A stretch of DNA of 64,000 bases from Auanema rhodensis (Eukaryota; Animalia; Nematoda): NCBI GenBank assembly GCA_964057225.1, contig OZ059898.1, forward strand, positions 6,324,001 through 6,388,000, written 5' to 3'. The number at the start of each line of letters is the position of its first letter. Position 1 is the stretch's first letter. The notes beneath the pieces are model-generated. The model searched no databases. It saw only the letters and a list, made by a program, of their open reading frames with translations, and had not been told where the DNA came from. The translations under genes and the position numbers were made by a program. Positions 1-64,000 of this stretch are shown here, piece by piece.

Positions 1-3000
1 CCAGGTAGTGGAACAACCACTTCTCTTGGAGATTCAGAATCTACGACAACTTCCAATGCTTCTGAAGTCTCAAATTCAAGCAGTGTCACAACCACTTCCC
101 CTAGAGCTTCAGAATCCACAAAATCTTCCGATGATTCCGAATTGTCGACTCCAAGCAGTGTCACAACCAGTTTGCCTGGAGCTTCAGAATCTGCAAAGCC
201 TTCTGATGAAACTAAAACAACCTTTCATCCAAAACATCTGAGTTTTTCGAGAGTTCCTGATGAAAAATCAACCACACCAACTGAGAACATCGTAACAGCC
301 ATATCCCACATGATTTCGAACGTTTTCTCGACTACTCCAAGTGCTCCAACAACACGAATGGAGGATGTTATGGGATTGGAGATCATGAATCCCAATAAGT
401 TTTCCCAAAATCCGAAATTCGTAGCGAAAACAACCACAGCTTCTGCCAAATCTGTCCTAGACTCTTCTACCCTTCCATCTTCTTCTGAAGTTTCAATTAC
501 TGAAGATTCTGGTGAAGAGCCGACTACTGTGATGGAGGATAAGATGGGCTTGGAAATTATGATTCCACGAAGACCAAATGTAAAATCAACCTTAGGGCCA
601 CAGCTTACTTCCTCTTCAGCAAATCCGAGCGATACTGTTTCTGCTTCATCTACTTCAGTAACTCCTGAAGGTGAAAGCACTGTCTCAGTTTCATCCGGCT
701 CATCAACTACTCCAGGTTCTGAATCTAATATTCCAACATCTACCGGAGCTTCAGTAACCCCTGGAGATGAAAGCCCTGTCTCAACTTCAACTGGAGCATC
801 AACTACTCCAGGTTCTGAATCTAATATTCCAACATCTACTGGAGCTTCAGTAACTCCTGGAGATGAAAGTACTGTCTCAACTTCAACTGTAACTTCAACC
901 AAGTCTGTTGTTGAAGCCTCGACTCCAACTTCTACTAGAGGTTCCGGAGAAGAGCTAACTACCGTAATGGAGGATAAGATGGGTTTGGAGATTATGAATC
1001 CACGAGGAACACAGGTGACATTCTCATCAAAACCGACATTCTCTGGTGATGTAGCATCCACTTCTTCTCCAACCGGAGTACAAACTACTGGAGATGCTGG
1101 AATCAGCTCATCATCACCACCTAGAGGTTCAACAGCTCCTGGTGATGTAGCATCTACTTCTTCTCCAACTGGAGTACAAACTACTGGAGATGCTGGAATC
1201 AGCTCATCATCACCACCTAGAGGTTCAACAGCTCCTGGTGATGTAGCATCCACTTCTTCTCCATCTGGAGTACAAACTACTGGAGATGCTGGAATCAGCT
1301 CATCATCACCACCTAGAGGTTCAACAGCTCCTGGTGATGTAGCATCCACTTCTTCTCCATCTGGAGTACAAACTACTGGAGATGCTGGAATCAGCTCATC
1401 ATCACCACCTAGAGGTTCAACAGCTCCTGGTGATGTAGCATCCACTTCTTCTCCAACCGGAGTACAAACTACTGGAGATGCTGGAATCAGCTCATCATCA
1501 CCACCTAGAGGTTCAACAGCTCCTGGTGATGTAGCATCCACTTCTTCTCCAACCGGAGTACAAACTACTGGAGATGCTGGAATCAGCTCATCATCACCAC
1601 CTAGAGGTTCAACAGCTCCTGGTGATGTAGCATCCACTTCTTCTCCAACCGGAGTACAAACTACTGGAGATGCTGGAATCAGCTCATCATTACCTAGAGG
1701 TTCAACAGCTCCTGGTGATGTAGCATCCACTTCTTCTCCATCTGGAGTACAAACTACTGGAGTTGCTGGAATCAGCTCATCATCATCACCTAGAGGTTCA
1801 ACAGCTCCTGGTGATGTAGCGTCCACTTCTTCTCCAACTGGAGTACAAACTACTGGAGATGCTGGAATCAGCTCATCATCACCACCTAGAGGTTCAACAG
1901 CTCCTGGTGATGTAGCATCCACTTCTTCTCCATCCGGAGTACAAACTACTGGAGATGCTGGAATCAGCTCATCATTACCTAGAGGTTCAACAGCTCCTGG
2001 TGATGTAGCATCCACTTCTTCTCCATCTGGAGTACAAACTACTGGAGATGCTGGAATCAGCTCATCATCATCACCTAGAGGTTCAACAGCTCCTGGTGAT
2101 GTAGCGTCCACTTCTTCTCCAACTGGAGTACAAACTACTGGAGATGCTGGCATCAGCTCATCATCAGCACCTAGAGGTTCAACAGCTCCTGGTGATGTAG
2201 CATCCACTTCTTCTCCATCTGGTGTTCAAACTACTCGAGATGCTGGAATCAGCTTGTCATCCCCTGGAGGTTCAACAGCTCCTGGTGATGTAGCATCCAC
2301 TTCTTCTCCATCTGGAGTACAAACTACTGGAGATGCTGGAATCAGCTCATCATCATCACCTAGAGGTTCAACAGCTCCTGGTGATGTAGCATCCACTTCT
2401 TCTCCAACCGGAGTACAAACTACTGGAGATGCTGGAATCAGCTCATCATCATCACCTAGAGGTTCAACAGCTCCTGGTGATGTAGCATCCACTTCTTCTC
2501 CATCTGGTGTTCAAACTACTCGAGATGCTGGAATCAGCTTGTCATCCCCTGGAGGTTCAACAGCTCCTGGTGATGTAGCATCCACTTCTTCTCCAACCGG
2601 AGTACAAACTACTGGAGATGCTGGCATCAGCTCATCATCAGCACCTAGAGGTTCAACAGCTCCTGGTGATGTAGCATCCACTTCTTCTCCATCTGGTGTT
2701 CAAACTACTCGAGATGCTGGAATCAGCTTGTCATCCCCTGGAGGTTCAACAGCTCCTGGTGATGTAGCATCCACTTCTTCTCCATCTGGAGTACAAACTA
2801 CTGGAGATGCTGGAATCAGCTCATCATCATCACCTAGAGGTTCAACAGCTCCTGGTGATGTAGCATCCACTTCTTCTCCAACCGGAGTACAAACTACTGG
2901 AGATGCTGGAATCAGCTCATCATCATCACCTAGAGGTTCAACAACTCCTGGTGATGTAGCATCCACTTCTTCTCCAACCGGAGTACAAACTACTGGAGAT

Positions 3001-6000
3001 GTTGGAATCAGCTCATCATCATCACCTAGAGGTTCAACAGCTCCTGGTGATGTAGCATCTACTTCTTCTCCAACTGGAGTACAAACTACTGGAGATGCTG
3101 GAATCAGCTCATCATCACCACCTAGAGGTTCAACAGCTCCTGGTGATGTAGCATCCACTTCTTCTCCAAACGGAGTACAAACTACTGGAGATGCTGGAAT
3201 CAGCTCATCATCACCACCTAGAGGTTCAACAGCTCCTGGTGATGTAGCATCCACTTCTTCTCCAACCGGAGTACAAACTACTGGAGATGCTGGAATCAGC
3301 TCATCATCACCACCTAGAGGTTCAACAGCTCCTGGTGATGTAGCATCCACTTCTTCTCCAACCGGAGTACAAACTACTGGAGATGCTGGAATCAGCTCAT
3401 CATCACCACCTAGAGGTTCAACAGCTCCTGGTGATGTAGCATCCACTTCTTCTCCAACCGGAGTACAAACTACTGGAGATGTTGGAATCAGCTCATCATC
3501 ATCACCTAGAGGTTCAACAGCTCCTGGTGATGTAGCATCCACTTCTTCTCCAACCGGAGTACAAACTACTGGAGATGCTGGAATCAGCTCATCATCACCA
3601 CCTAGAGGTTCAACAGCTCCTGGTGATGTAGCATCCACTTCTTCTCCAACCGGAGTACAAACTACTGGAGATGCTGGAATCAGCTCATCATCACCACCTA
3701 GAGGTTCAACAGCTCCTGGTGATGTAGCATCCACTTCTTCTCCAACCGGAGTACAAACTACTGGAGATGCTGGAATCAGCTCATCATCACCACCTAGAGG
3801 TTCAACAGCTCCTGGTGATGTAGCATCCACTTCTTCTCCAACCGGAGTACAAACTACTGGAGATGCTGGAATCAGCTCATCATCACCACCTAGAGGTTCA
3901 ACAGCTCCTGGTGATGTAGCATCCACTTCTTCTCCAACCGGAGTACAAACTACTGGAGATGCTGGAATCAGCTCATCATCACCACCTAGAGGTTCAACAG
4001 CTCCTGGTGATGTAGTGACTGGAGATGGTGGAATCACATCATCCACTGTATCAGAAAACACAACTAATACCCCTGTTATAGTTGAAAGTACGGTATCATC
4101 CAATTTTGTTGTCATTTCCTCTAAAACAATTAAAGAATTTGAAACAACAACAACACATGATGGTACAACTAATACTGATATGCCAGTTGAAGTTGATATT
4201 GTGCAACAAATTGTCACCAAGTCTGGAAGACAACCTGATAGCTTTACTGCAAGCCCTTCGTCTAAATTTAAAATGCTTTTCTTAACTCCTGATGACAGTG
4301 ATGAAACTGAAGATTCTTCTCAAGAACAATTAGTAAAAACCAGTACTCCATCATCCTCGTTATTCCTAAAAATTAGAAAAGATCAAACGCTTTCTGGAAA
4401 ATCAACATCAACTACAATGACAACTCAATCAAAATCATTCACAAAATCATCTTCAGAAACTCATCTAACAACAAGAAATTCTAAATCTGTATCAGATGTA
4501 ACAACAACCACGAAGCCAAGTAATGAAGAGAATGTAACGCCTTTCTTCCGAAGTACAATGGCTTCATCAAGTCAAGAACCAGAACCAATTGTTGAAATTA
4601 TGTGGCCAGACATTTTAGAAACGGATGTTGTACAAGATATTAGTGTACCAACACCAGGTACATCAGTTCCAACTCAAAAGCCTATCAAGACAGCAACCTC
4701 TTCAACTATATCTATTGAAACCAAAAATTCACATAAGCCAAAGGATTCAAAACATAAACCAATATCAACCGTTGCACCAAAATTACAAAAACCAATTACT
4801 TCAAAATCAAAATTACCAAATATTATAGAAACAACAAAAACTCATAAATTGGTAATTTCGAAAGAATATCCAACATCAACTATGTTTACGCCTTTTCCAA
4901 TTGATACTAGCTTTACCAACTATTTGTCACCGCTTTTCACAACTGCACAATCACATATTAATGATGACACTGAGAGCACCTCCACAACACTAGATCCTCT
5001 TGCAGAAGATAATCCATATTTTCCAGCTCATACTACTTCACCTTCTAGTGATATTGAAGTTCACAACAATGAGTTCCACCGTGGTTCTCCCAAGTTGCCA
5101 CACGGAAAGTAAGTTCTTTCTTAAATTCGTTTAAAATTCATATAATCTCTGTTTAGATGTTCTGAAGAAGATCGCAGCCAATGTCATGAATTTGCTATTT
5201 GCCAAGTTTCCACCGGAACTTGTAGATGTAAAAATGGCTTTGAGGGTAATGGATATAACTTCTGCCGGTATGTTGCTTTCTTCAGTTTTCTAAATTATTT
5301 TTTTTTGTTTTCAGGCGAGTTGATGCTGTTGACTGTGTCGCTAATTCGTCTATCTGTCATGCATCCGCTTCATGTGATCGTCATAGTCGTCGCTGTCAAT
5401 GTCCAGCAGGACATATCGGTGATGGCATTCTCTGTTCACCAGATCCACAAGACTGTTTGTTGCGTGAAGACTTATGTTCTCCTGATGCTATTTGCGTCGG
5501 AAGACGTTGTCAATGTGTTGAAGGATTTACTGGTGATGGAGTCAAATGTGTATCTCTTCATCAGCGATCGGCTAACTGCTCAGAATGTGATGTTAATGCT
5601 CAGTGTAATCATGGAGTTTGTGAATGCAATGTAAGTACAATAATCTTAAATATCAAATATAATATCATTATCTTCAGAATGGATATTTCGGAAACGGTTT
5701 ATGCTGTGTACCAGATCCACGTGATTGTATTCATTTCCCTGGAGTCTGTCATCCATCTGCTACTTGTAACAACCAAACCCGTCAATGTGCATGTGATGAA
5801 GGATATCTTGGTGATGGAATTCAATGCTTCCCTCGCTTATCCTGCCGCACTGATCCATCTGTCTGTCATCGTAATGCTTTATGCTTACCATCCGGTCAAT
5901 GTATGTGCCAACATGGTTATGAAGGAAATGGCCATCATTGTGAAAAAAGTAAGAAAAATCTTCATTAACTATAGTTAAATAATTTATTTTTAGTCTCATC

Positions 6001-7705
6001 ATTAGCTATGCGTAGACCACAAGCTCTTGATTCACCAAATGCTTGTAACAACAAGTGTGATTCATCTTCCGAGACATGCACAAACGGATCTTGTCAATGT
6101 AAAAACGGTTTTGAACGTAAATCGGATAACAAGTGTTACGGTATGTGTTGAATAATTAGAAATAAAATTTGAATTCAATTAATTTTCAGATATAAACGAA
6201 TGTACTGATAGATCCGTATGCCATCATCTTGCTACTTGTCACAATCAGCCAGGATCATACCGTTGTGAATGTCCAGAAGGATACGTTGGAGACGGAAAAA
6301 TCTGTGTACAACATCTTCGTGTTGGAGAACTTTCAGGTAACTATTTTTGGTTTTTATTTAACCAATTAAACAAAATATTTTAGTTTTCTGTGAACCTGAT
6401 GGCATGACATTGGTTCTTGGAAATGAAACAGAATTATTCGAAGGACGTATCTTTGTACGTGGACAAGCTGAAAATCCTCACTGTTCTAAGATGTTCTCAT
6501 CTCTTCAACAGAATGTTAAACCATATACATTCAAAGTACCATTCGAACATTGTAATGTACATCTTGAGAATCATGTAAGTTATTTATATTTATAACTAAT
6601 ATTCATATAATTAATATAAATTATTTTAGGATACATTTGCTACTACTGTTATTGTTCAAAAACATCCAATGTTCATAACAACATCAGCTGATGCTTATGA
6701 TCTGAAGTGTACTTATCCTGTTGGCGTACGTGAAGTTGAATCTCATGTCAACGTATCAGAACTAGCTGCAACATCTACGTTATCTGATAAAACAGAAGGA
6801 CCATTATGCAAGATCAGTGTAATGAATGAGAAAGATGAATCGATTAATGCTGCTACTGTTGGCGAATCGTTACGTCTCCGATTAGAAGTATCACCCAATC
6901 AAACATATTCCATTCTACCAAGAAACTGCTTTGCCATTAACATTGAAACTGGTGAACGATACTCTTTAACTGATAAGGCTGGTTGTGCTATTGATGATCA
7001 GCTCTTCCCAGAATGGATTAGAGTTCGACCATCAGTGACTGAAGCTGTTTTCAAGTAAGTTCCTTTAATATTTCAAATTTTATATAATTATTTCTTTTTT
7101 CTTTCAGAACATTTAAATGGCCCGATAGCTCTATTATTCGATTCCAATGTGACTGTAGTGCTTGCGTTGGTGATTGTCCAGCCGTTGATTGTGGACGTCG
7201 CCGTGAAGCTGCTATGCGAAGATTCCGTTTCCGTCGTGCTCACTCAAATAACGATACTGAAGTGATTGAAACCGAAAAAGATGAAGAAGAAGAAAATCTT
7301 GATGCACAAGTAGTAACATCTCAACAGATGGCTTTCTCTTCTCTTGTCCAAGTACATGAAGGCGATGAACAAGTTCGTGCTCAAGAACAAGTAGAACATT
7401 GGCGTCGTGGAAGTAAGTTATCGTTTATTATAATTAATTAATATTCATATATGTATATCTTTATTAATTTTATTAATTTTTAATTATTTTCAGGCCCATC
7501 AAATGGAGTTGTGATGAAATCAACAGCTACCTTATCTGAATCCGTCTGCGTACGAACTATTCTTATAGTATTATCTGCTCTTAGTTCAGCATTCTGTCTT
7601 GGTTTCCTTATTATTCTTCTCATACTCCGTTGTCGTCGCCGTGATTCTCAAATTCCCAAAGATATATTATCAACTGATTCTCCTATTTCCGTTATCAGTT
7701 ATTAG
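1..7705 (+). CDS. fbn-1: Fibrillin-like apical ECM protein FBN-1 (5'-partial): Ser/Thr mucin region, EGF repeats, ZP domain, furin site, TM
   Basis: Frame is open from base 1. Manual exons: <1-5108, 5157-5267, 5315-5630, 5678-5948, 5994-6140, 6190-6336, 6384-6574, 6630-7054, 7108-7412, 7494-7705, all GT-AG. EGFs include CQCVEGFTGDGVKC and calcium-type DINEC. The ZP domain (FCEPDGMTLVLGNET..FEGRIFVRGQAENPHC...ILPRNCFAINIETGERY...TFKWPDSSIIRFQCDC) closely matches C. elegans FBN-1 as I recall it. RRFRFRR precedes the TM helix. Confidence 0.9.
661..900 (+). repeat. Older degenerate 96-bp coding repeat (~2.5 copies; STTPGSESNIPTSTGASVTPGDES)
   Basis: CCAGGTTCTGAATCTAATATTCC occurs at 712 and 808. 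Confidence 0.85.
1045..4014 (+). repeat. Coding tandem repeat: ~31 copies of a 96-bp (32 aa) unit, GDVASTSSPTGVQTTGDAGISSSSPPRGSTAP, with five 93-bp variants
   Basis: GGTGATGTAG recurs at 1045, 1141, 1237 ... 3910, 4006. Shorter units start at 1621, 1906, 2191, 2476 and 2665. Confidence 0.97.
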
Positions 7706-27148: not shown

Positions 27149-30100
27149 ATGAGCTCACTGGTCAGCGGAAACAGTATTTTGCACATAGCTAACCGATTGA
27201 GCGATCTCAAGAAAGAGACGCCAACATCGGATGAAGATGAGAATTCTTCTCATTTTCTATCAAGTTTTAGCTCATCATCTCCAGTTGATTTGATGGATGA
27301 TGTTACTAAGCCATCAGAAGATATTGACGACGAAACAGAAGATAATGAAGAGGATGATATGATCAGAGAAACATCAACTCCACCAACAGAGCAGATGAAC
27401 GGTAAAACTTTTCGTTATCTCTAACTATAGTAAAGAAAAGCTTGACCAATGCATATTTCTACGTACAAGAATTTTTTTTTCTTTTCAACACAAAAAATAG
27501 CAAATAATCCTTTTTGCTGATATCATATTGCCAAAAGAAATTATAAAAGTAGATATATAGCACAGGGAAACAGTTTAAAGAGTGTGAGAGATTGTAAGAT
27601 AGGGTATAGTGTACTAGAACCTATCCGCTTATGAAGTTCTTATGCTTTAATAGTTTTAAAAATATTTTGTATGTTAAATTAAGTTGTGAAGCTTAAAGCA
27701 ACCACTTAGTTTCTATCAAGAAGTCCTCCAATTTTTTTGTCAATTCAGTTTGAATTTTGGACATAAGCAGACAATAGAAAATCTCGTTTCAACTAGGGGG
27801 CCGATGAGGACGTTTACATCGAAAAACCTCATTCTTTCAAATTATTCAAGTTTAGTTGAAGCTTAAAGTACAAAATTGCTCTATATGTTGGTTATAATAA
27901 AGCTTCCGGCTTTTTCACTTTGATTTAGAATTCTTCAATTATTTTATAATTTTTTTTCAAAAAAAAAAAAAAAAAAAAGCTTCTAATCTGAATCATAATA
28001 AAATTTTTTTTTGCTGCAGACAACTTTAAAAGCTTTTTTTTTTTAAAGTAACACACATACATATGTATGTGAGTGAGTGCGCGTGAATATGTGTATGTGT
28101 GTACATGTGTCCATCTGGGTTATAAGATAATTTTGATATTTCTAGCTGACTAGACTACCATCTTTTTTAATTTTTATGTTCATATTTTTATGATATCACT
28201 GTAAAATTATGTGATTATGTGAAAATATTTAATTTTGAAATAAATTTATAATCATCATTACCACCTATCTATTTAATCATATTTTTTTGTTTTAGCTGAT
28301 ATGGAATCTGAATCATGTGTCTTAAATTCAAATGAAATTTCAAGCGATAATGATGTTAAGCTTAGCTTTTCCATGTTTTTAGATAAAATTACAGTAAGTT
28401 ATTTGTATATTTTTGAATATTTTATCTATTAAATATGAATTTTTAGCATCCACCATCACCATCTACTTCTACTAATCACAGCACAGATTCAATTCCTTCT
28501 CCAAATTTGGATTTACAATCAGCCGTTGCTCAGATGCAACAGCAGATTCTAGCTAGTCAGGTAGTGCTTCTTGAACTTTTTGAACTTCAACACGTTTTGG
28601 AAACTATTTAATTTGAAAAATAATTTCAGTCAATAATGAATAAGCAATGCGATGAAAATAATGGACATAATGTCTCACCAGGCTTAGGAGTTGAGCAAAT
28701 GGTAACAATGAGAGGTAAGCATTCACTTTTCTCTCTATCTCCTTCTCTCTCTTTCACTTTCTTTCCCTCCTTCTATTTCTCTCTTTATCTCCTTCTCTAT
28801 CTCACTCCCTCTCTCTTTCTCTCTCTCTTTCTCTCTCTTTTTCCTATTCTCTCTTTTAATTATTTATCTTCATCTTCATACTTACATTCACACCTTTTCT
28901 ATACTGAAATCTGGATTCTACCATATTAACGGATTAAAGTTTTAGATCTATTGCCTGGATATTCTCCTTGGCTTAGAAATGCAGGAAGAAAGAAGTCTCA
29001 TCCGGTCTGGGAATTTTTCAAAGATTTGAAAGATACAAGTAATTCCTTCAATACATTTCAAATACAATATTATTTTTTTAAAGAAAATTTACAATCTGAT
29101 GGAGCTGGAGGAGTAGTTTGTCTTCATTGTCCATGGACAGGAGATGATAGAAGCCCAAATAATTTACGGACACATCTGAAAAAGTTTCATTCAGCTGATG
29201 GCATTTTTGCTCAGTTCAGTCAGAAGTTAGCACAAGTAAGTTATTGAACTGAGTGAAGAATTCGGGAGAAAAGTTCAAAATAAATATAATTTTTTACAAA
29301 ATTTGGAGAAAAAAATGCTGAATATGAATTATTGAATGAGTTCAAAATAAGGTCTAGGACATATACACACATGTGTGTGTGTATGTATGTGTGTGCATGT
29401 GTCTGTGTGTATTTTTAAAAGAAAATAATACATCAAACATCATTGACTGCTTATACTTCATCATATACTCATGTTGAAGACTACTGTTAGATTGTATATT
29501 CATGCTATCGAATATGGATGCCTAGAGGGGCAATCACTGGTTCCCGTGGATACGAAATCTCTTTTGAGCTTTTCCCTAATCTTTATATTTCTCTCACCCT
29601 ACCTTGCACCGTCGATTTTTCTCACTCACTCTCTCTCTCTCTCTCTCTTTCTTTCTCTCTTTCTCTCTCTTTCTAACTTCTTCTATATAAGTATAATCCA
29701 TGGATAACTATATATAGATATATATATATAGTTTTTAATCAAATGTTTTTGAAATATTATAATTAAAATACAAAAATGATTTTTTCATAAAAATATATTA
29801 AAATAGAAAAGTAGAAGTAGAATTAAACAACAAATCAATTCTTCTTTTTTTTCTTTTCTTCATTCTTTATAATTAAATAATATCGTTAAATCATTATAAA
29901 TTATAATAAGTTTTACTGAAAGCTTGTTTCGTTTCTCATCGTCGTACATATCTTAAATCAGTCTCGTTTTATTTCTTTCGACTTCTTCTTTGAATATACC
30001 AAATGAACTCCTATTTCTTCCCTTTTGCATTAACGCCCCCCCCCCCCGTTTTTCATTCCCAAACCCCTATATGTCAATTCTCCCCCCCCCCGTGTGTTGA

Positions 30101-31033: not shown

Positions 31034-34000
31034 TTTTTCTTCTTGTTGTCTTTCATTCTGCAATAGCGTTCCTTTATTTCGTTTCACATCTATCTCCTCC
31101 TCGTTCTTTTCCTACTACTTCTCAACCACCACCAAAACCTTGCCTTTCCCTCCCCCCCCGCTACATCATCTCTTCTAGTTCATCCATTACCATAGTCAAT
31201 CTTCATTTTGCTTCTCTTCTTTTACTCCAAGCCCTCCTTTCACGTACTTCTAGAAACTCTTCTATTTCTGAATTCTTACATCATCTTCTTACTCTAATAC
31301 CCATTTCTTCTATTCAAGGTTTGAGTCATAGCTTATGTTTAAAGAATTTAAACTCTTCGAAATCAGCTAATTATATGTTTTTTTCGAATTTAATTTGATT
31401 TTCTTTGTACCATTTGAAATATGTCAATGATATTAACTTACTTTTCTTCATACCATGATCATTCCAACTTTACTCCCAAGGTCTTCTCAATATTAGCTGA
31501 ACAAGTTGACATACAGACGATCGGACAGACTCCCCTACTATACTTTTCTCACCCCTCCACTCACACCCTCTCTTTCTCTTACTCTCTCTCTTTCTCTCTA
31601 CTTCTTTTTCTATATCTCTCCTCATATCGCTATCTCAGTTCCTCTATTTCTCCCTCTCTATGCCTTTTTCGATCTCTTATACTATTTTCAGTCCATTTAC
31701 TTTGACATTATCTGGGTTTCTTCGGTCCTTCAGAAAGCTTGATTTTTGCTAAGAACGATTATAGTGAAAACAAAGAATTCTGTAAAGCAACTAAATAAAA
31801 ATTACGTTAAGCATGGTATAAGATTAGATCAGTAGAGACTTTTCCTACTCTTCAGACTCAGATATAGCACCTTCTGGAGCTCATTTCAGACTGGTGTGGT
31901 AAAGATGAGGAAACGGTGAAAAAACGAAGATGATGAACAGAATAAGAATGTCTCTTCTTCTTCGCTTTCTTCGCTCTTCCCTCGCTTTTTCATATTCGCG
32001 ATGTTCTCATCTCTTCGTATGCTTCGTGGTGATGACGGTGTGAGAGGAAAGAAGGGGGGAGAGGTGGCTGAGAGGGGAGGGCGAAATAGGGGGGGGGGGT
32101 TTGTGTGTGCTGTGTGCGGACCCCGTCTATCGATTCGTGGGGTTGTTTCCAGTCTCCCTCCCTTTCTCTCCTTCTCTCTCACATCCCCTTTTGCTATCTT
32201 CAACATCCCCCCGTTTGGTTGTCTATCTGACTGTCTGATGTCTCCTTATTCAAATAATGACTATGCCCCGTTCAGTCTTCTATACTCTCTAACCGGGTCC
32301 TTATTCTCTGCCGTTTCGTCCCGTCTACGTAGGTGACGTCGTCGTAGTCGTCGTCGTCGTCACGTCTTGTCCTTCTACTAGCAGCAGCACGAAGACGAAG
32401 TCAACTAATGCTTCATTTACTATATGATTACCAATAGCCATGATCAGCAAGACTGTGTTCTAAAACTATTTCATTTTTCATTGTATTGTCTCGCTTCATT
32501 GAATTAACTTTGAGAATTTCCTCGAATTCTAAAGAGAAATGGAAAAAAAATTAATCTGTCTGGAAAGTTATATTTAAACATATAATATATATTATACATT
32601 TCATATTATTATATTATTTTCACACTGTAATTTTTTTTTATTTCAATTTCTTAGAAATTCATTTATTTATTTTGAAAATGACTATACAAACTTTTGTATA
32701 TATCAAAGCTTTTTAATCATTTTCACATAAAGTTTTTGGACATTTACTACGTATTTCTCTGAATTCTAATTGATGAAACGGTTTTAGACAATTGTTTCCA
32801 TCTGAAACCGTCTTTTATCACTTTTCTTTCTTTTTTATTCTTTTTTATGTATGTGTATATACTATACTATATAAATGTATTTATATACATAGTTCTTGTC
32901 CACTTTCCTTTCCTACATTTCAACTTCCTCAGTTTTGCTTCTCTCTCTTTCCCTTTGTCTTTTTATCTCTCTCTATCTCTTTTTCTCTTTCTCTCTATGT
33001 CTGGCTTTCCATGAATCTTTCTAATATTCTATATGAAGGTGGTGTAAAGCTTTTGTACTTCTTCAACAACTTGCGTATTCCATTTATTAGATTTTTCTAA
33101 ATTATTAGTGCTCTTTTTGCCTCATAAGCATTTCTTATTTCATACGTATTTATTATTTTTCTTGTCAGCTCGAAACTTTATTCTTTGGTTTTCTTGAAAG
33201 CAACAAAAAAAATTTTTTTTTCTACAGCTTATCCAAATATCCTGCATATTGGAGTGAAAATATTGTGAAAAATATACAGAACTTCACATCCATCTCTAAT
33301 AATGGAAGTGGTTTCTGTCAATTCCGAAGAAGCATTGAACTCTCTTATCATCGCTGATGCCTTCCATGCATTAGCTGGAGCTAGCACATCGTCAGCATCA
33401 ACCTCACAACAACCAAAAGCAATGCTGAAATCACAGAAGACGAATAAGAAATCATCTGAAATTTGGGATCACTATCGTCTTCTCTCTGAAGCTCAGAATG
33501 TAGAGTGTGTGCATTGCTGGCGAGTCCTTAAACGAGCCGATAGCTCCACCAAGAGTATGTGGGGCCATATGAATGCTTTTCATCAGGACCAGCTAGCAGA
33601 AACAAACAGTCGAAAGAAGAGAAGAATATTATCTATTGTCAAAGATGAGGTCCGACATACTGATAGTTCAGCCTTTTTTTACTCAATTTCAATCATAATT
33701 TCAATCAGACAGCATTACAAAATTGTTGTTTGTTGTTATGAAAAAAAAAACAATTTTATTTTCAAAATTTAAAAGAAAAACTTTTTTTCTTTTTTTTTTA
33801 AATCACACATATCGTTTTTCAGACTCCCACTCAGCCATATGTAAAACGGGCGCGTGCTGGAGCAAGTCAGCAGCAGCAACAACAGCAACATCAGCAGCAG
33901 AATCATAGTACAACATCGTCATCTCAGCCAACATCCCAGGCTGATGATGTTGCTATGGTAATACAACAACTTCAGAATGCTGCAAACAGTAGTAACTCAA

Positions 34001-50755: not shown

Positions 50756-53268
50756 ATGGATTTCTCAGAGGTAATAGATAACTATTCATAGATTGTAGTA
50801 AACTATTAGTTATAGTTAATGATATCTGAATGATTTTGATATAATTCTTTCAGATTACCTTGTTCTTCTTATTACTTTGTGTTTCTCTTTCCCAAGCAAT
50901 CAAATGTAAATGCACAAAAGAATCTGAAACTATAACATGTTATGATGGTGTTTGTGATGCTGAAGGAGGATGTAAGTTCATTAATATTTCTTATTTTCTA
51001 TTATTTCTTTTATATTTTTTATATTTTCTTCATCATTTTTTATATTCAATTATTTGTTCTTCACTTATTCACCCATTCTTTCGAATTGAATGATGGATGA
51101 GGCAGTTGCTCTAATGACAAAGTGCCATCGAACATCTCAACCTCAAATATTTTTTAAAATTTATTTTTTTCCTTTTGGTATATTATACATATTTTCTTTA
51201 ACTTTAAAATCTTTTAAAGAAATACCCTATTCGCTCTATTTAAAGTGAAGTAGAAGAAATTAAATGTCACCTAGACGTATTAGAACACAAAGCTCAAAGA
51301 ACTGCCAGAAGTTCAATGCTTCAAGATTACTCGATCGAAAAAAATAAAAACGTTTAAGCTAGTTTAGACTAGTCCATATAGGAAATGCAACTCAAATGAG
51401 TCAGAAACATTATCTTACTAAGAGTTGACCCTTTAACCATAACCATTAGTTGATATGTTTATATTTATTTGCTTTTCTCATCGTTATCCTAAACAAAAAA
51501 AAAGAAAAGAAAAGAGAAAAAGAATATAAACTAAGAATAGTACTGATTACTAAAGAACTTAATAAATAAATAAAATAGCTACATACATATACATACATCC
51601 ATATATAAGATTTGAAAAAAAAAACATTATAAATCTTTTCTTTAACTTTCTTTTAAATGTTATATTTAACTAAATATAGTATATAGTTTATATTATATTA
51701 TAAGTGTTCAACATTTATTTGATTATTGTATTAGTTGACCTTTTGAAAAAAAGTTTTACCTCTCTTCGCTCAATGCTGCTCCCTATCCCTTTTTCTTTTT
51801 CAAAACTGTATTATAGATTTGTTCGCAATTTATAATAGTGAATCATCACTTATTCAGATCTCTTGAAAAAGCACAAAATTTCTATTTTCCTAATATCATT
51901 TTTCGATCAAATATTCATTTCGTTCATTTTACTTGATCGAAAGGCGGAAACAAATGGTTAGCTTTCTTGAAAGAGTAAAGGAATAAGAGAGAGATATGAA
52001 TATCAAATTTCCATAATTAACAAATTTAAAAAGAATTTTGTTAAACAAGAGTATGCTCTTAATAGCATATTGACATGAAAATTATATTCTAAATACGAAT
52101 ATCTGAGGTCAAGACTCTTAATCTCTGCTATACAATTCACATTTAATTATATTCTTTTTGTTATAATATCAATATATATCGATATATAATATAAATAAAT
52201 ATAATTAATATAAATATCTAAATATACATATGTATATATCTTTCTATATATATATATAGTATATATAAGCTTAAGTATTAATATTGAAGACTATAAGATA
52301 ATATATATAATTTAGAAAAGGAAAAAAACAAATTATTATTATTTAGAAATAGTTGTTGTTCTTTTTAACATTCATTTTTAATATTTAATCTTTAGTTGCT
52401 ATGTTATATCATCAGTAGTAAACAGATTAAATGATGAGATTCACGAAACAGAAATAGTAATAAATTGCGAAAATCATTAGAAATATTATTTCTATCATAA
52501 TTTAACTATTTTTTTAAATAATACAAAACAAAATTTACATATAATTATATAGTAAAATAAAAGAAAAATCATTAAAATAATTTTCAGCTTGTTTAATGCT
52601 TGATCATCCTACTATGGGAGTTCATTATACATGTCATAACAAGAGTTTAAGGGTAAGTATTTCATATTCTAATGTTAATTTAACTAATACATATTTATAA
52701 AAATTAAAATTGAAACATTTATTTGATTTAGTTATCAAAGTTTATGTGAATATTTAATTAATATGAAGTGACAATGACATGTATTTATTGTATTCAGTCA
52801 TTACGTGACCTTTACAAAGTTCACGTGAGCAGTAATGGCATGATGTAAATAATCTAGTTAAGAAGATATACATACATATGCATGTTTTTCATATAATTAA
52901 TTAATTTACATTTATAAATATGTATAGTTTGATCTTTAATTATTCCTATTATTCATTTATAATTATTTTTTATAGGATGGAGCATGTCTATTCAAAACTT
53001 CCAAAAGTGGTGCTAATGTAAGAATCTGCGCATGTAATATAATGGATTTTTGTAATTATTCATATTGGCCTGAAAAGTACGTTTTTTTTGGATATTCTTG
53101 TTATTATTTATATATTATACTTATTCAAGGTCAACTAGATCAATCCCATCAGAACGTCGTACACAAGTTGCTCGCGATGATTCAAATACGGATAAACTAG
53201 GAACCTCAATCACAAGTCAAGTTTGCGTTATGATCAGCTTTTTGGCATTTGTACATCAAATAATGTAA
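50756..53268 (+). CDS. Small secreted/GPI-anchored three-finger-fold protein (Ly6 / activin-receptor-ectodomain-like)
   Basis: Exons: 50756-50770, 50854-50971, 52588-52652, 52976-53076, 53130-53268. Translation MDFSEITLFFLLLCVSLSQA-IKCKC...TCYDGVC...SCLML...YTC...GAC...ICAC..DFCN: 10 Cys with a terminal CN motif, then a polar spacer and hydrophobic C-terminus (VCVMISFLAFVHQIM*). Confidence 0.8.
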
Positions 53269-54414: not shown

Positions 54415-55137
54415 CTAATTCTTAAAAAAAGAAAATTCTTCTGATGATTCGGGCATACTTCGCTTGATGAATGGTGGCTCTTTCACTGGCACTGGAAGTA
54501 TAGGTGGATATGGCAATCGAAGTGATCGCTTTTTCAATGGAGGTTCACGTAATGGTACACGTAACATATCCAAAGGATAACTAGTTCTCCTTTCAACAAA
54601 GTAATCTTTATCTGATCTTAAAAAAAGAAAAGATAAGATAATAAGTTAATTATTCAATAATATATATTATATTATATAATTAAATATTATTATTATAATT
54701 ATATTTCTACATGTTATCATACCTTTTAAGAGGTGGTTCACGTAATGGTATGCGGGGCATAAGCTGACTTCCAGCTGATGGATAAACTGACATATCTCTT
54801 TTCAACTCATTATTTTTCTTTTCTGGAACTAAAACGTGTTGTTTGTTGATGTTACCTACTTAAATTCATTGACTTACGTTGAAAATATCGTAACTGAGGA
54901 ATTGGGAAATCAGCTCTTTCTAGCTCAACTGAAAAAATAAAAGAATACTTAAAGAATCTTATATACTTTGACGAGTTTAAATAGAATAATGAAACGATAA
55001 AATTATCACAAAATTTCAGTAAAAAATCCGTTCACTCAAATATTTTATTTTCATGAAAATAAAAAGCTCGTACCCCAATCAGATAGCTGATTAGCTTGTA
55101 CGGACACACATAGCAGGCCGATCATAACGAGCCACAT
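54415..55137 (-). CDS. Neuropeptide-like precursor with three P-[LV]-[RK]-EPP-[LF] peptides
   Basis: TTTCCAG-AA-ATG start. Exons: 55137-55074, 54928-54878, 54828-54723, 54616-54415. Translation: MWLVMIGLLCVSVQA NQLSDWVELERADFPIPQLRYFQLPEKKNNEL KR DMSVYPSAGSQLMPRIPLREPPL KR SDKDYFVE RR TSYPLDMLRVPLREPPL KKR SLRLPYPPILPVPVKEPPFI KR SMPESSEEFSFFKN*. Confidence 0.85.
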
Positions 55138-55139
55138 TT

Positions 55140-55146
55140 CTGGAAA
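55140..55146 (-). promoter_or_regulatory. Probable SL trans-splice acceptor of the neuropeptide gene
   Basis: TTTCCAG lies 2 nt before the ATG on the minus strand. Confidence 0.55.
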
Positions 55147-55683
55147 AAAATAGAGAAATTTGAAACAAAAACCATACAATTACAGAAAGAATAAAGAAAA
55201 CTTTTTATTATTATGACGATGATGATGATGATAATGATGATGATGATGCAGATAGACAAGTAAGGAAAAACAATGTAAAGTATAAACAGGAACCGGAAGC
55301 ATTTATAGTAAAAATGTGTAAATTAAGATTACTATATATACATTTTTTTGAATAGTTTAAATTTTTTTATAATTTTCTAGTTTACTTTGAGAACAAAACA
55401 TAACATTTGTATTGTGTGAAGTTTCATTTGTGCAATGGGGAGGAACAACATCATCATTCAGGTCATGAAATAGGTCCGCGATATTTCAAGTAAAGTTCAA
55501 AATTAATTATTTCATTTCGCTCGTTCACAAATGATGCTATTGAATAAGTTAAGATCAAATTGAGCATTATAATGTGTTGACAGATAAATAAAGGAAGAAC
55601 AAGTCAATGTACAAAAGTTTAAGCCTTTATAAAGGAAATATAGTTATACTTCCAGTTAATGACAACATTTTGCTGACGTAGTC

Positions 55684-62108: not shown

Positions 62109-64000
<1,892 letters not shown>

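What the first reader, a model, noticed from the sequence alone, without database searches (positions are those of the whole stretch)
54415..55137. Hidden neuropeptide precursor encoding non-amidated 'PLREPPL' peptides
Seen: a four-exon gene absent from the ORF track, with a signal peptide and dibasic sites (KR, RR, KKR). These release DMSVYPSAGSQLMPRIPLREPPL, TSYPLDMLRVPLREPPL and SLRLPYPPILPVPVKEPPFI. No C-terminal Gly, so no amidation. Established: this is the architecture processed by EGL-3/PC2 and EGL-21/CPE. I cannot match it from memory to a named flp/nlp family, so it may be an orphan ligand family with an unknown GPCR. Proline-rich ends suggest protease resistance (inference).
Basis: partly seen in the sequence, partly recalled or inferred. 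Interest (0 to 1): 0.75.

Follow-up and report, generated by a model that had tools for sequence, protein, structure and literature searches.

The report
Orthologue of nematode neuropeptide gene nlp-68
The stretch is a real, strongly conserved four-exon gene for a secreted peptide precursor, but it is not an unknown family: it is this worm's copy of the named nematode gene nlp-68, whose matching peptides have already been detected by mass spectrometry in Haemonchus contortus.

Summary
The minus strand of 54415-55137 carries a four-exon, 423-base reading frame with canonical GT..AG introns. It has a hydrophobic signal peptide and three Pro-rich peptides ending in EPPL or EPPF. Each peptide is flanked by KR, RR or KKR, and none ends in Gly.

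The "orphan, unnamed family" reading is not supported. A full-text search for PLREPPL led to H. contortus nlp-68, whose peptide DSYVYPSTNSQLSDRIPLREPPL was detected unmodified by mass spectrometry. Exon 3 matches that protein at 20/26 residues. It matches C. elegans "Neuropeptide-like protein 68" at 16/33.

An annotated Auanema sp. JU1783 protein has the same layout, with 97% (33/34) identity to exon 3 and 96% (51/53) to exon 4. Against Auanema, synonymous sites are near saturation (pS 0.53-0.75). Non-synonymous change is about 0.04, and the introns do not align.

The gene lies next to the 4-hydroxyphenylpyruvate dioxygenase gene in the window, Auanema, Heterorhabditis and C. elegans. It is single-copy in its own genome.

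This lineage has a decayed copy of the otherwise conserved short peptide GxDPxSIPxLI[KR]EPPL. It also carries two extra C-terminal copies. No receptor or function for nlp-68 appears in the searchable literature.

Verdict: an ordinary new member of a known kind. Interest is low.

The parts
55140..55150 (-). T-rich acceptor-like site (tttttttccag) two bases upstream of the ATG; a candidate spliced-leader trans-splice site
   Evidence: Read directly. The orthologues also have an acceptor-like site at or next to the ATG: C. elegans aattccag|ATG, H. contortus gttttcag|ATG, Auanema tttaag-aa-ATG. Trans-splicing itself is inferred.
55074..55137 (-). Exon 1: start codon (55137-55135) and signal peptide MWLVMIGLLCVSVQA (55137-55093), then NQLSDW plus the first base of a split codon
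   Evidence: It has a hydrophobic core and V-Q-A before the predicted cleavage. It aligns with the signal peptides of P0001 and the strongylid proteins. The donor is G|GTACGA.
54878..54928 (-). Exon 2: fast-evolving propeptide region. ADFPIPQLRYFQ (54879-54914), continued by LPE-KK in exon 3, looks like a decayed copy of the conserved short peptide GxDPxSIPxLI[KR]EPPL
   Evidence: In one search the corresponding Auanema stretch VPQLRLYRILSSPEKK aligns under IDPLSLPRLLKEPPLKR of the other species. Calling it decay is my inference from that alignment.
54723..54828 (-). Exon 3: KK and KR sites plus the family's hallmark long peptide
   Evidence: Matches: 20/26 identical to H. contortus NLP-68 (E 2e-11), 16/33 to C. 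elegans NLP-68 (E 2e-9), 33/34 to Auanema.
54728..54796 (-). Predicted mature peptide A, DMSVYPSAGSQLMPRIPLREPPL (23 residues, KR on both sides, no C-terminal Gly)
   Evidence: The orthologous peptide DSYVYPSTNSQLSDRIPLREPPL was detected by MS, unmodified, in H. contortus larvae. It sits at residues 82-104 of P0011.
54415..54616 (-). Exon 4: spacer SDKDYFVE (54592-54615), RR, peptide B, KKR, peptide C, KR, acidic tail SMPESSEEFSFFKN (54418-54459) and stop TAG (54415-54417)
   Evidence: It is 51/53 identical to Auanema P0001. The tail after the last KR is not conserved: Auanema ends in NS.
54535..54585 (-). Predicted mature peptide B, TSYPLDMLRVPLREPPL (17 residues)
   Evidence: It is identical in Auanema. 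It aligns with LSFYPVSEQHRITVREPPL of Heterorhabditis P0003.
54466..54525 (-). Predicted mature peptide C, SLRLPYPPILPVPVKEPPFI (20 residues)
   Evidence: It differs by one residue in Auanema. It aligns with GSVFPMSIRVPLKEPPL of Heterorhabditis P0003.
62109..63312 (-). Neighbouring gene upstream on the same strand: 4-hydroxyphenylpyruvate dioxygenase (hpd-1-like). It serves as the positional marker for orthology
   Evidence: Pfam Glyoxalase match, E 4e-14. It is 92-97% identical to the Auanema gene and 75-87% to the C. elegans gene. The same gene neighbours nlp-68 in L003 and L004, and is fused to it in the Heterorhabditis model P0003.

Best explanation
The stretch is the single-copy orthologue of the nematode neuropeptide-like protein gene nlp-68. 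The genome is that of a rhabditid worm closely related to Auanema sp. JU1783.

The 140-codon product would enter the secretory pathway through a 15-residue signal peptide. It would then be cut at KK, KR, RR and KKR sites by a PC2-type convertase, and the basic residues would be trimmed by a carboxypeptidase E-type enzyme. This would release three non-amidated peptides with the C-terminal motif [RK]EPP[LF](I), plus spacer peptides. By analogy with other nlp products they would act as extracellular signals on a receptor that is not yet known.

Shown here: the gene structure, the homology, the position next to hpd-1, purifying selection on the peptide-coding exons, and the presence of convertase and 7B2 genes in this genome.

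Shown by others: the orthologous peptides exist as processed, unmodified peptides in H. contortus.

Inferred: processing and secretion in this species, neuronal expression, and signalling through a receptor.
For: - Literature: the string PLREPPL occurs in one paper, PMC8153747. It lists the nlp-68 peptides LVREPPLI, GIDPFSIPTLIKEPPL and DSYVYPSTNSQLSDRIPLREPPL as detected by MS and unmodified. That paper named its precursors by BLAST of the 82 C. elegans NLP precursors.
- H. contortus protein: P0011 holds exactly those three peptides at residues 50-57, 60-75 and 82-104.
- Library-wide search: HMMER with exon 3 against 1.84 billion proteins returned five hits. Three are family members: Auanema P0001 (1.3e-13), Heterorhabditis P0003 (6.9e-6) and Nippostrongylus P0004 (4.7e-4).
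- Profile search: a profile of the family reaches 'Neuropeptide-like protein 68 [Caenorhabditis elegans]' at 9.7e-13, and six other Caenorhabditis species.
- Pairwise BLAST.
- Position: nlp-68 lies next to HPPD in Auanema and C. elegans chromosome III. The two are fused in one gene model in Heterorhabditis. HPPD lies 7 kb upstream in the window.
- Selection against Auanema: pN is 0.04. pS is 0.53 in exon 3 and 0.75 in exon 4. The introns do not align.
- Own genome: one copy only. There are at least four loci with convertase P-domains and one 7B2 locus.
- Language-model neighbours of P0011 are multi-copy neuropeptide precursors at scores of 0.87-0.90. This is a lead only.
Against: - No transcript, peptide or expression data exist for this species in the tools.
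- No SignalP or NeuroPred run was possible.
- The short peptide conserved in Caenorhabditis, Strongylida and Heterorhabditis is not intact here.
- Many genes called 'nlp' are named for their architecture only, and some are not neuronal.
- No receptor or mutant phenotype specific to nlp-68 was found in the searchable literature. A triple mutant nlp-60; nlp-68; nlp-67 behaved much like the other multi-neuropeptide mutant strains listed beside it in a hypoxia food-leaving assay.
- Profile A1 included the Auanema protein, so its hit on C. elegans is not independent of that lineage. The pairwise results are independent.
Confidence: 0.9

Rival explanations
1. It is a real nlp-68 orthologue, but the peptides are not neuronal signals. 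The precursor would be made in non-neuronal tissue (gland, epidermis, intestine or reproductive tract), and its Pro-rich peptides would serve another extracellular role.
For: The 'nlp' label rests on architecture. No expression data or receptor for nlp-68 were found. One database gives the Nippostrongylus orthologue the automatic name 'Seminal fluid protein HACP016'. That label is unsupported by anything seen here.
Against: The dibasic-flanked multi-copy layout, very strong constraint on the mature peptides with free drift of the propeptide parts, and MS detection alongside classical neuropeptides in larval extracts are the usual signature of regulated-pathway neuropeptides. The peptides have no net positive charge, unlike Pro-rich antimicrobial peptides (read from the sequence).
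Confidence: 0.08
2. It is a new, unnamed orphan neuropeptide family.
For: Pfam has no model for it. The word search with exon 4 alone was blank, although that search could see only proteins of 36-115 residues. Nearly all orthologues are labelled 'hypothetical' or 'uncharacterized' in the databases.
Against: There is direct homology and conserved position with C. elegans NLP-68 and H. contortus nlp-68.
Confidence: 0.01
3. It is a chance arrangement of short open frames, or a dead gene.
For: No single ORF exceeds 52 codons. There is no RNA evidence for this species.
Against: The frame stays intact over four exons with canonical splice sites. The coding exons are 97% and 96% identical in protein to Auanema while synonymous sites are near saturation and the introns do not align. 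Auanema carries an independently annotated four-exon model of the same layout.
Confidence: 0.01

Closest known systems
NLP-68 of Haemonchus contortus (HCON_00070810; P0011, 168 aa)
   Same: Both have a signal peptide and dibasic-flanked, non-amidated peptides ending in EPPL. The long peptide D..VYPS..SQL..RIPLREPPL is shared at 20/26 residues including its KR flanks. The H. contortus peptides were detected by MS as unmodified.
   Different: H. contortus has the order LVREPPLI, GIDPFSIPTLIKEPPL, long peptide, followed by a roughly 60-residue C-terminal extension ending in RIWWH. The window gene has only a decayed remnant before the long peptide. After it come two further EPPL/EPPF peptides and no such extension. 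No HPPD gene lies within 10 kb in H. contortus.
NLP-68 of Caenorhabditis elegans (P0032, 145 aa, chromosome III)
   Same: It is the same family by profile and pairwise match. It lies next to the HPPD (hpd-1-like) gene. The peptide GDVVYPSAAKQTVPLVRVREPPL corresponds to peptide A.
   Different: There are only two EPPL peptides, both encoded in the first exon. The C-terminal extension ends in IYTW. HPPD is convergent and 0.8 kb downstream, rather than 7 kb upstream on the same strand. Identity to exon 3 is 48%.
Auanema sp. JU1783 CAI4230369.1 (P0001, 132 aa, 'unnamed protein product')
   Same: The four-exon layout, peptide order (A, spacer, B, C) and decayed N-terminal copy are the same. HPPD lies upstream on the same strand. 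Peptides A and B are identical, and peptide C differs at one residue.
   Different: The signal peptide and propeptide region are diverged. Auanema lacks the acidic tail after the last KR. Its intergenic distance to HPPD is 3.9 kb against 7 kb here.
Heterorhabditis bacteriophora UniRef100_A0A1I7XST6 (P0003, a chimeric HPPD::nlp-68 gene model)
   Same: Besides the Auanema protein P0001, it is the only relative seen with homologues of peptides B and C downstream of the long peptide. The adjacency to HPPD is the same.
   Different: It carries five intact EPPL peptides, including the two N-terminal ones that are decayed in the window. The deposited model wrongly joins the last part of HPPD to the precursor.

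Membership tests
NLP-68 (nematode neuropeptide-like protein 68) | Significant sequence similarity to named NLP-68 proteins, with family members as the best hits in a library-wide search | tested here: met
   Exon 3 against 1.84 billion proteins returned five hits, three of them family members and two repeat proteins. Pairwise E-values are 2e-11 to H. contortus and 2e-9 to C. elegans NLP-68. The family profile reaches C. elegans NLP-68 at 9.7e-13.
NLP-68 (nematode neuropeptide-like protein 68) | Hallmark long peptide [DG]xxVYPSxxxQ...R[IV]PLREPPL, bounded by KR on both sides and without a C-terminal Gly | tested here: met
   KR-DMSVYPSAGSQLMPRIPLREPPL-KR is read. The columns Y86 P87 S91 L93 R96 P98 L99 E101 P102 P103 L104 K105 R106 are invariant in alignment A1, and all are present in the window.
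NLP-68 (nematode neuropeptide-like protein 68) | N-terminal signal peptide | tested here: met
   There is a hydrophobic core with Kyte-Doolittle means of 2.5-3.1, followed by V-Q-A. It aligns with the signal peptides of the orthologues. No dedicated predictor was available.
NLP-68 (nematode neuropeptide-like protein 68) | Positional orthology: the gene lies next to the HPPD (hpd-1) gene | tested here: met
   This holds in the window, Auanema, C. elegans and the fused Heterorhabditis model. It was not seen within 10 kb in H. contortus.
NLP-68 (nematode neuropeptide-like protein 68) | Typical but not universal feature: an intact short peptide G[IVL]DPxSIPxLI[KR]EPPL before the long peptide | tested here: not met
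   The window has ADFPIPQLRYFQLPE-KK at that place, and Auanema has VPQLRLYRILSSPE-KK. No further EPP[LIFVM] frame lies within 50-60 kb. I read this as a loss in the lineage of the window species and Auanema, not as a reason to exclude the gene, because homology and position are met.
NLP-68 (nematode neuropeptide-like protein 68) | Peptides actually produced and processed in the animal | not testable with these tools
   MS evidence exists only for H. contortus. The C. elegans resource paper (Van Bael et al. 2018) is not held in the library.
Regulated-pathway neuropeptide precursor (processed by PC2/EGL-3 and CPE/EGL-21) | The processing machinery is encoded in the same genome | tested here: met
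   Convertase P-domain matches occur at four or more loci, and there is one 7B2 (Secretogranin V) locus. Carboxypeptidase E was not searched. Which convertase acts on this precursor is inferred.

The most novel reading that the evidence does not exclude
NLP-68 may be a still-orphan ligand family, seen so far only in rhabditine (clade V) nematodes. Its peptide complement appears to be remodelled lineage by lineage: two copies in Caenorhabditis, three to four in Strongylida, five in Heterorhabditis. The lineage of the window species and Auanema would have lost the short peptide that is otherwise conserved, yet kept two extra C-terminal copies under very strong constraint. If the copies address different receptors, this natural loss and retention pattern would show which peptide is the indispensable ligand. 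The long VYPS...PLREPPL peptide is the only one kept everywhere. That would guide deorphanisation in C. elegans and in parasitic strongylids.
Probability: 0.4. Interest if true: 0.3.

Novelty: new member of a known kind. Interest (0 to 1): 0.15.

Why it matters
The result mainly removes a false lead: the "hidden orphan neuropeptide" is the local copy of nlp-68. Three modest points remain.

1. It gives a firm four-exon annotation and predicted peptide set for a gene that ORF-based tracks miss.
2. It shows that the long VYPS...PLREPPL peptide is the invariant core of the family. The other copies come and go, which tells anyone seeking the NLP-68 receptor which peptide to test first.
3. It flags database errors in the family: a chimeric HPPD::nlp-68 model in Heterorhabditis, and spurious automatic names in Nippostrongylus and Heligmosomoides.

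The family is present in major livestock and human parasites (Haemonchus, Ancylostoma, Necator, Teladorsagia). A receptor, once found, would therefore interest anthelmintic research, but that does not depend on this window.

Tried and rejected
- My first guess from composition was an insect, perhaps hymenopteran, neuropeptide gene. The window is about 25% G+C with CT microsatellites. I dropped this once the nlp-68 match and the Auanema relatives appeared.
- The word-indexed protein search with exon 4 alone was blank. This is explained by its length limit of 36-115 residues, since all relatives are 128 residues or longer. It is not evidence of absence.
- Pfam scans of the exons and of six orthologues gave nothing.
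- P0002 and P0005 from the big search are long tandem-repeat proteins that match only a low-complexity stretch. I rejected them as relatives.
- The UniRef label 'CRF domain-containing protein' on the Heligmosomoides orthologue was checked against Pfam and found no support.
- Supplementary tables of the H. contortus peptidomics paper and of the C. elegans peptide-GPCR screen are not held. The Van Bael 2018 paper is not held either. I therefore could not check whether NLP-68 peptides were screened against GPCRs or seen by MS in C. elegans.
- A search for extra EPPL-type exons around the gene found none.
- Intron positions are not conserved between the window or Auanema and C. elegans or H. contortus, so they add nothing to the orthology argument.
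- All searches used single exons by reference. A search or signal-peptide prediction on the whole 140-residue product was left out.

Full report
**What is there.** The finding lies on the minus strand. Read from 55137 downwards, the sequence gives an ATG two bases after a T-rich acceptor-like site (tttttttccag-aa-ATG). Four exons follow: 55137-55074, 54928-54878, 54828-54723 and 54616-54415. They are separated by introns of 145, 49 and 106 bases. All three introns begin with GT and end with a nematode-type T-rich AG acceptor. The exon lengths sum to 423 bases, which is 140 codons plus TAG.

Each exon was translated by reference. Together they give:
- a hydrophobic N-terminus, MWLVMIGLLCVSVQA, followed by NQLSDW;
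- a propeptide stretch;
- KR-DMSVYPSAGSQLMPRIPLREPPL-KR;
- the spacer SDKDYFVE, then RR-TSYPLDMLRVPLREPPL-KKR;
- SLRLPYPPILPVPVKEPPFI-KR;
- an acidic tail.

None of the three peptides ends in Gly. The first nine-residue windows have Kyte-Doolittle means of 2.5 to 3.1, and V-Q-A precedes the likely signal-peptidase site.

**More than chance.** The motif P[LVI][RK]EPP[LFI] occurs three times in the six-frame translation of the whole window. All three are in this gene, on one strand and in the spliced frame. A looser motif adds no further copy between 50 and 60 kb on that strand except one unrelated hit. In DNA of about 25% G+C, a seven-residue motif with four prolines is expected far less than once by chance. 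That estimate is my own inference from composition.

**What it is.** A full-text search for the string PLREPPL returned a single paper, the peptidomics study of Haemonchus contortus (PMC8153747). Its Table 4 lists three peptides under nlp-68 (HCON_00070810): LVREPPLI, GIDPFSIPTLIKEPPL and DSYVYPSTNSQLSDRIPLREPPL. All three were detected by mass spectrometry and all are marked "unmodified". The authors named their precursors by BLAST of the 82 C. elegans NLP precursors of Van Bael et al. against the H. contortus gene sets.

*Protein searches.*
- The word-indexed search with exon 4 was blank. It sees only proteins of 36 to 115 residues, and every relative found later is 128 or longer.
- HMMER with exon 3 against 1.84 billion representatives gave five hits. 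Three are relatives:
  - P0001 from Auanema sp. JU1783 (1.3e-13);
  - P0003 from Heterorhabditis bacteriophora (6.9e-6);
  - P0004 from Nippostrongylus brasiliensis (4.7e-4).
- The other two hits are tandem-repeat proteins and were discarded.
- A word search from P0004 found the family across the Strongylida, including H. contortus P0011. P0011 contains exactly the three MS-detected peptides at the published positions.
- A profile of eleven members then reached "Neuropeptide-like protein 68 [Caenorhabditis elegans]" (P0032, 9.7e-13) and six other Caenorhabditis species.

*Pairwise matches.*
- Exon 3 matches H. contortus NLP-68 at 20 of 26 residues (E 2e-11).
- Exon 3 matches C. elegans NLP-68 at 16 of 33 residues (E 2e-9).
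- Exon 4 matches the Auanema protein at 51 of 53 residues.

**Position.** In the window, a 4-hydroxyphenylpyruvate dioxygenase gene lies about 7 kb upstream on the same strand. Its exons at 62109-63312 have a Pfam Glyoxalase match.
- In Auanema the same gene lies 3.9 kb upstream of the orthologue on the same strand.
- In C. elegans chromosome III it lies 0.8 kb away in convergent orientation.
- In Heterorhabditis the deposited gene model fuses the end of that enzyme to the precursor, which shows that the two are neighbours there as well.
- In H. contortus no such gene lies within 10 kb.

The enzyme exons in the window are 92-97% identical in protein to Auanema and 75-87% to C. elegans. The window therefore comes from a close relative of Auanema sp. 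JU1783. The species itself cannot be named with these tools. Its assembly is 181 Mb in 112 contigs, and the gene is single-copy in it.

**Selection.** A DNA alignment of the window gene with the Auanema locus shows exons 3 and 4 aligning codon for codon, with changes mostly at third positions. The introns and flanks do not align. The counts are:

| Region | Synonymous differences | Non-synonymous differences | pS | pN |
|---|---|---|---|---|
| Exon 3 | 12.0 | 3.0 | 0.53 | 0.038 |
| Exon 4, first 53 codons | 28.0 | 5.0 | 0.75 | 0.041 |

The ratio for exon 3 is about 0.04. For exon 4 synonymous sites are saturated. By contrast, the signal peptide and the propeptide region differ widely between the two species, as does the tail after the last KR. 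Tight constraint on the mature peptides and their cleavage sites, with drift elsewhere, is the usual pattern for a processed peptide precursor.

**How it most likely works.** The product enters the secretory pathway and loses its signal peptide. It is cut at the dibasic sites by a PC2-type convertase and trimmed by a carboxypeptidase E-type enzyme. This leaves free-acid peptides ending in EPPL or EPPFI.
- The genome encodes convertase P-domains at four or more loci and a 7B2 homologue, the PC2 helper.
- The absence of Gly before the basic sites means there is no substrate for amidation. This matches the "unmodified" state seen by MS in H. contortus.
- Processing in this species, neuronal expression and action on a receptor are all inferred.
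- A protein-language-model look-up with the H. contortus protein returned only multi-copy neuropeptide precursors as nearest clusters (PBAN, CAPA, FMRFamide-related, allatostatin, TRH and tachykinin), at scores of 0.87-0.90. That range is a lead and not evidence.

**How it differs from its relatives.** The family's peptide complement varies.
- Caenorhabditis has two peptides: GVDPMSIPRLIKEPPL and the long peptide.
- H. contortus has three.
- Ancylostoma and Cylicocyclus have four.
- Heterorhabditis has five: two before and two after the long peptide.
- The window and Auanema keep the long peptide and the two that follow it.

Where the others have G-x-DP-x-SIP-x-LI-[KR]-EPPL-KR, the window has ADFPIPQLRYFQLPE-KK and Auanema has VPQLRLYRILSSPE-KK. 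I read these as decayed copies. The window and Auanema also lack the C-terminal extension ending in RLWR or IYTW that Strongylida and Caenorhabditis carry. The long VYPS...PLREPPL peptide is the only element kept in every species seen.

**What is known about function.** Only two papers in the searchable library mention nlp-68. One is the H. contortus peptidomics study. The other is a C. elegans note in which a triple mutant nlp-60; nlp-68; nlp-67 scored about the same as the other multi-neuropeptide mutant strains listed beside it in a hypoxia food-leaving assay. A 2024 review table of conserved peptide-receptor systems does not list NLP-68. The supplementary tables of the large peptide-GPCR screen are not held, so I cannot say whether NLP-68 peptides were tested or found a receptor.

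**Limits.**
- No signal-peptide or cleavage predictor was available.
- The taxonomic range (only Rhabditina seen) rests on searches limited by word index and by query length. It should not be taken as the true range.
- A second in-frame acceptor 6 bases into exon 3 cannot be excluded without RNA data.

**Verdict.** This is a real, constrained, correctly described gene. It is an orthologue of a named family, with a lineage-specific peptide complement. It is a new member of a known kind, and its interest is low.

Noticed in passing
window 142-7058 (+): A very large exon (1656-codon ORF) encodes some 35 near-identical 33-residue Ser/Thr/Pro-rich repeats of the type GDVASTSSPTGVQTTGDAGISSSSPPRGSTAP. 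It is followed by Cys-rich EGF-like ORFs (weak Pfam EGF_3 match) and a weak cuticlin C-terminal/ZP-type match. It looks like a mucin-like apical matrix protein of the EGF plus ZP kind. G+C is 46-48% here against about 25% elsewhere in the window.
   Followed up: partly
window 62109-63312 (-), L003 4202-6059, L004 11659-13614: The 4-hydroxyphenylpyruvate dioxygenase gene is a conserved neighbour of nlp-68 in the window, Auanema, Heterorhabditis and C. elegans. It is inverted in C. elegans. No such gene lies within 10 kb in H. contortus.
   Followed up: yes
P0003 (UniRef100_A0A1I7XST6), P0004, P0007: There are database errors in the family. The Heterorhabditis entry named '4-hydroxyphenylpyruvate dioxygenase' is a chimera of the enzyme's last part and the nlp-68 precursor. 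The Nippostrongylus and Heligmosomoides orthologues carry the automatic names 'Seminal fluid protein HACP016' and 'CRF domain-containing protein', neither of which has Pfam support.
   Followed up: partly
window 55195-55250: An ATG/ATC trinucleotide microsatellite (gatgatgatgataatgatgatg...) lies about 60-110 bases upstream of the nlp-68 start codon, in the presumed promoter or outron.
   Followed up: no
window 50860-51093 (+): A short ORF begins with a signal-peptide-like stretch followed by a Cys-rich segment (MFFLLLCVSLSQA IKCKCTKESETITCYDGVCDAEGGCKF). It may be the first exon of another secreted or receptor-ectodomain protein.
   Followed up: no
window 28951-29247 and 33302-33772 (+): There are two BED-type zinc-finger ORFs. 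The second has a Pfam zf-BED match (E 2e-7). They are the subject of a separate first-stage note and were not examined further here.
   Followed up: no
window 54823-54829 (-): Tandem in-frame acceptors (ttttag then ttccag) lie at the start of exon 3. Use of the second would remove two codons from the non-conserved propeptide region.
   Followed up: no
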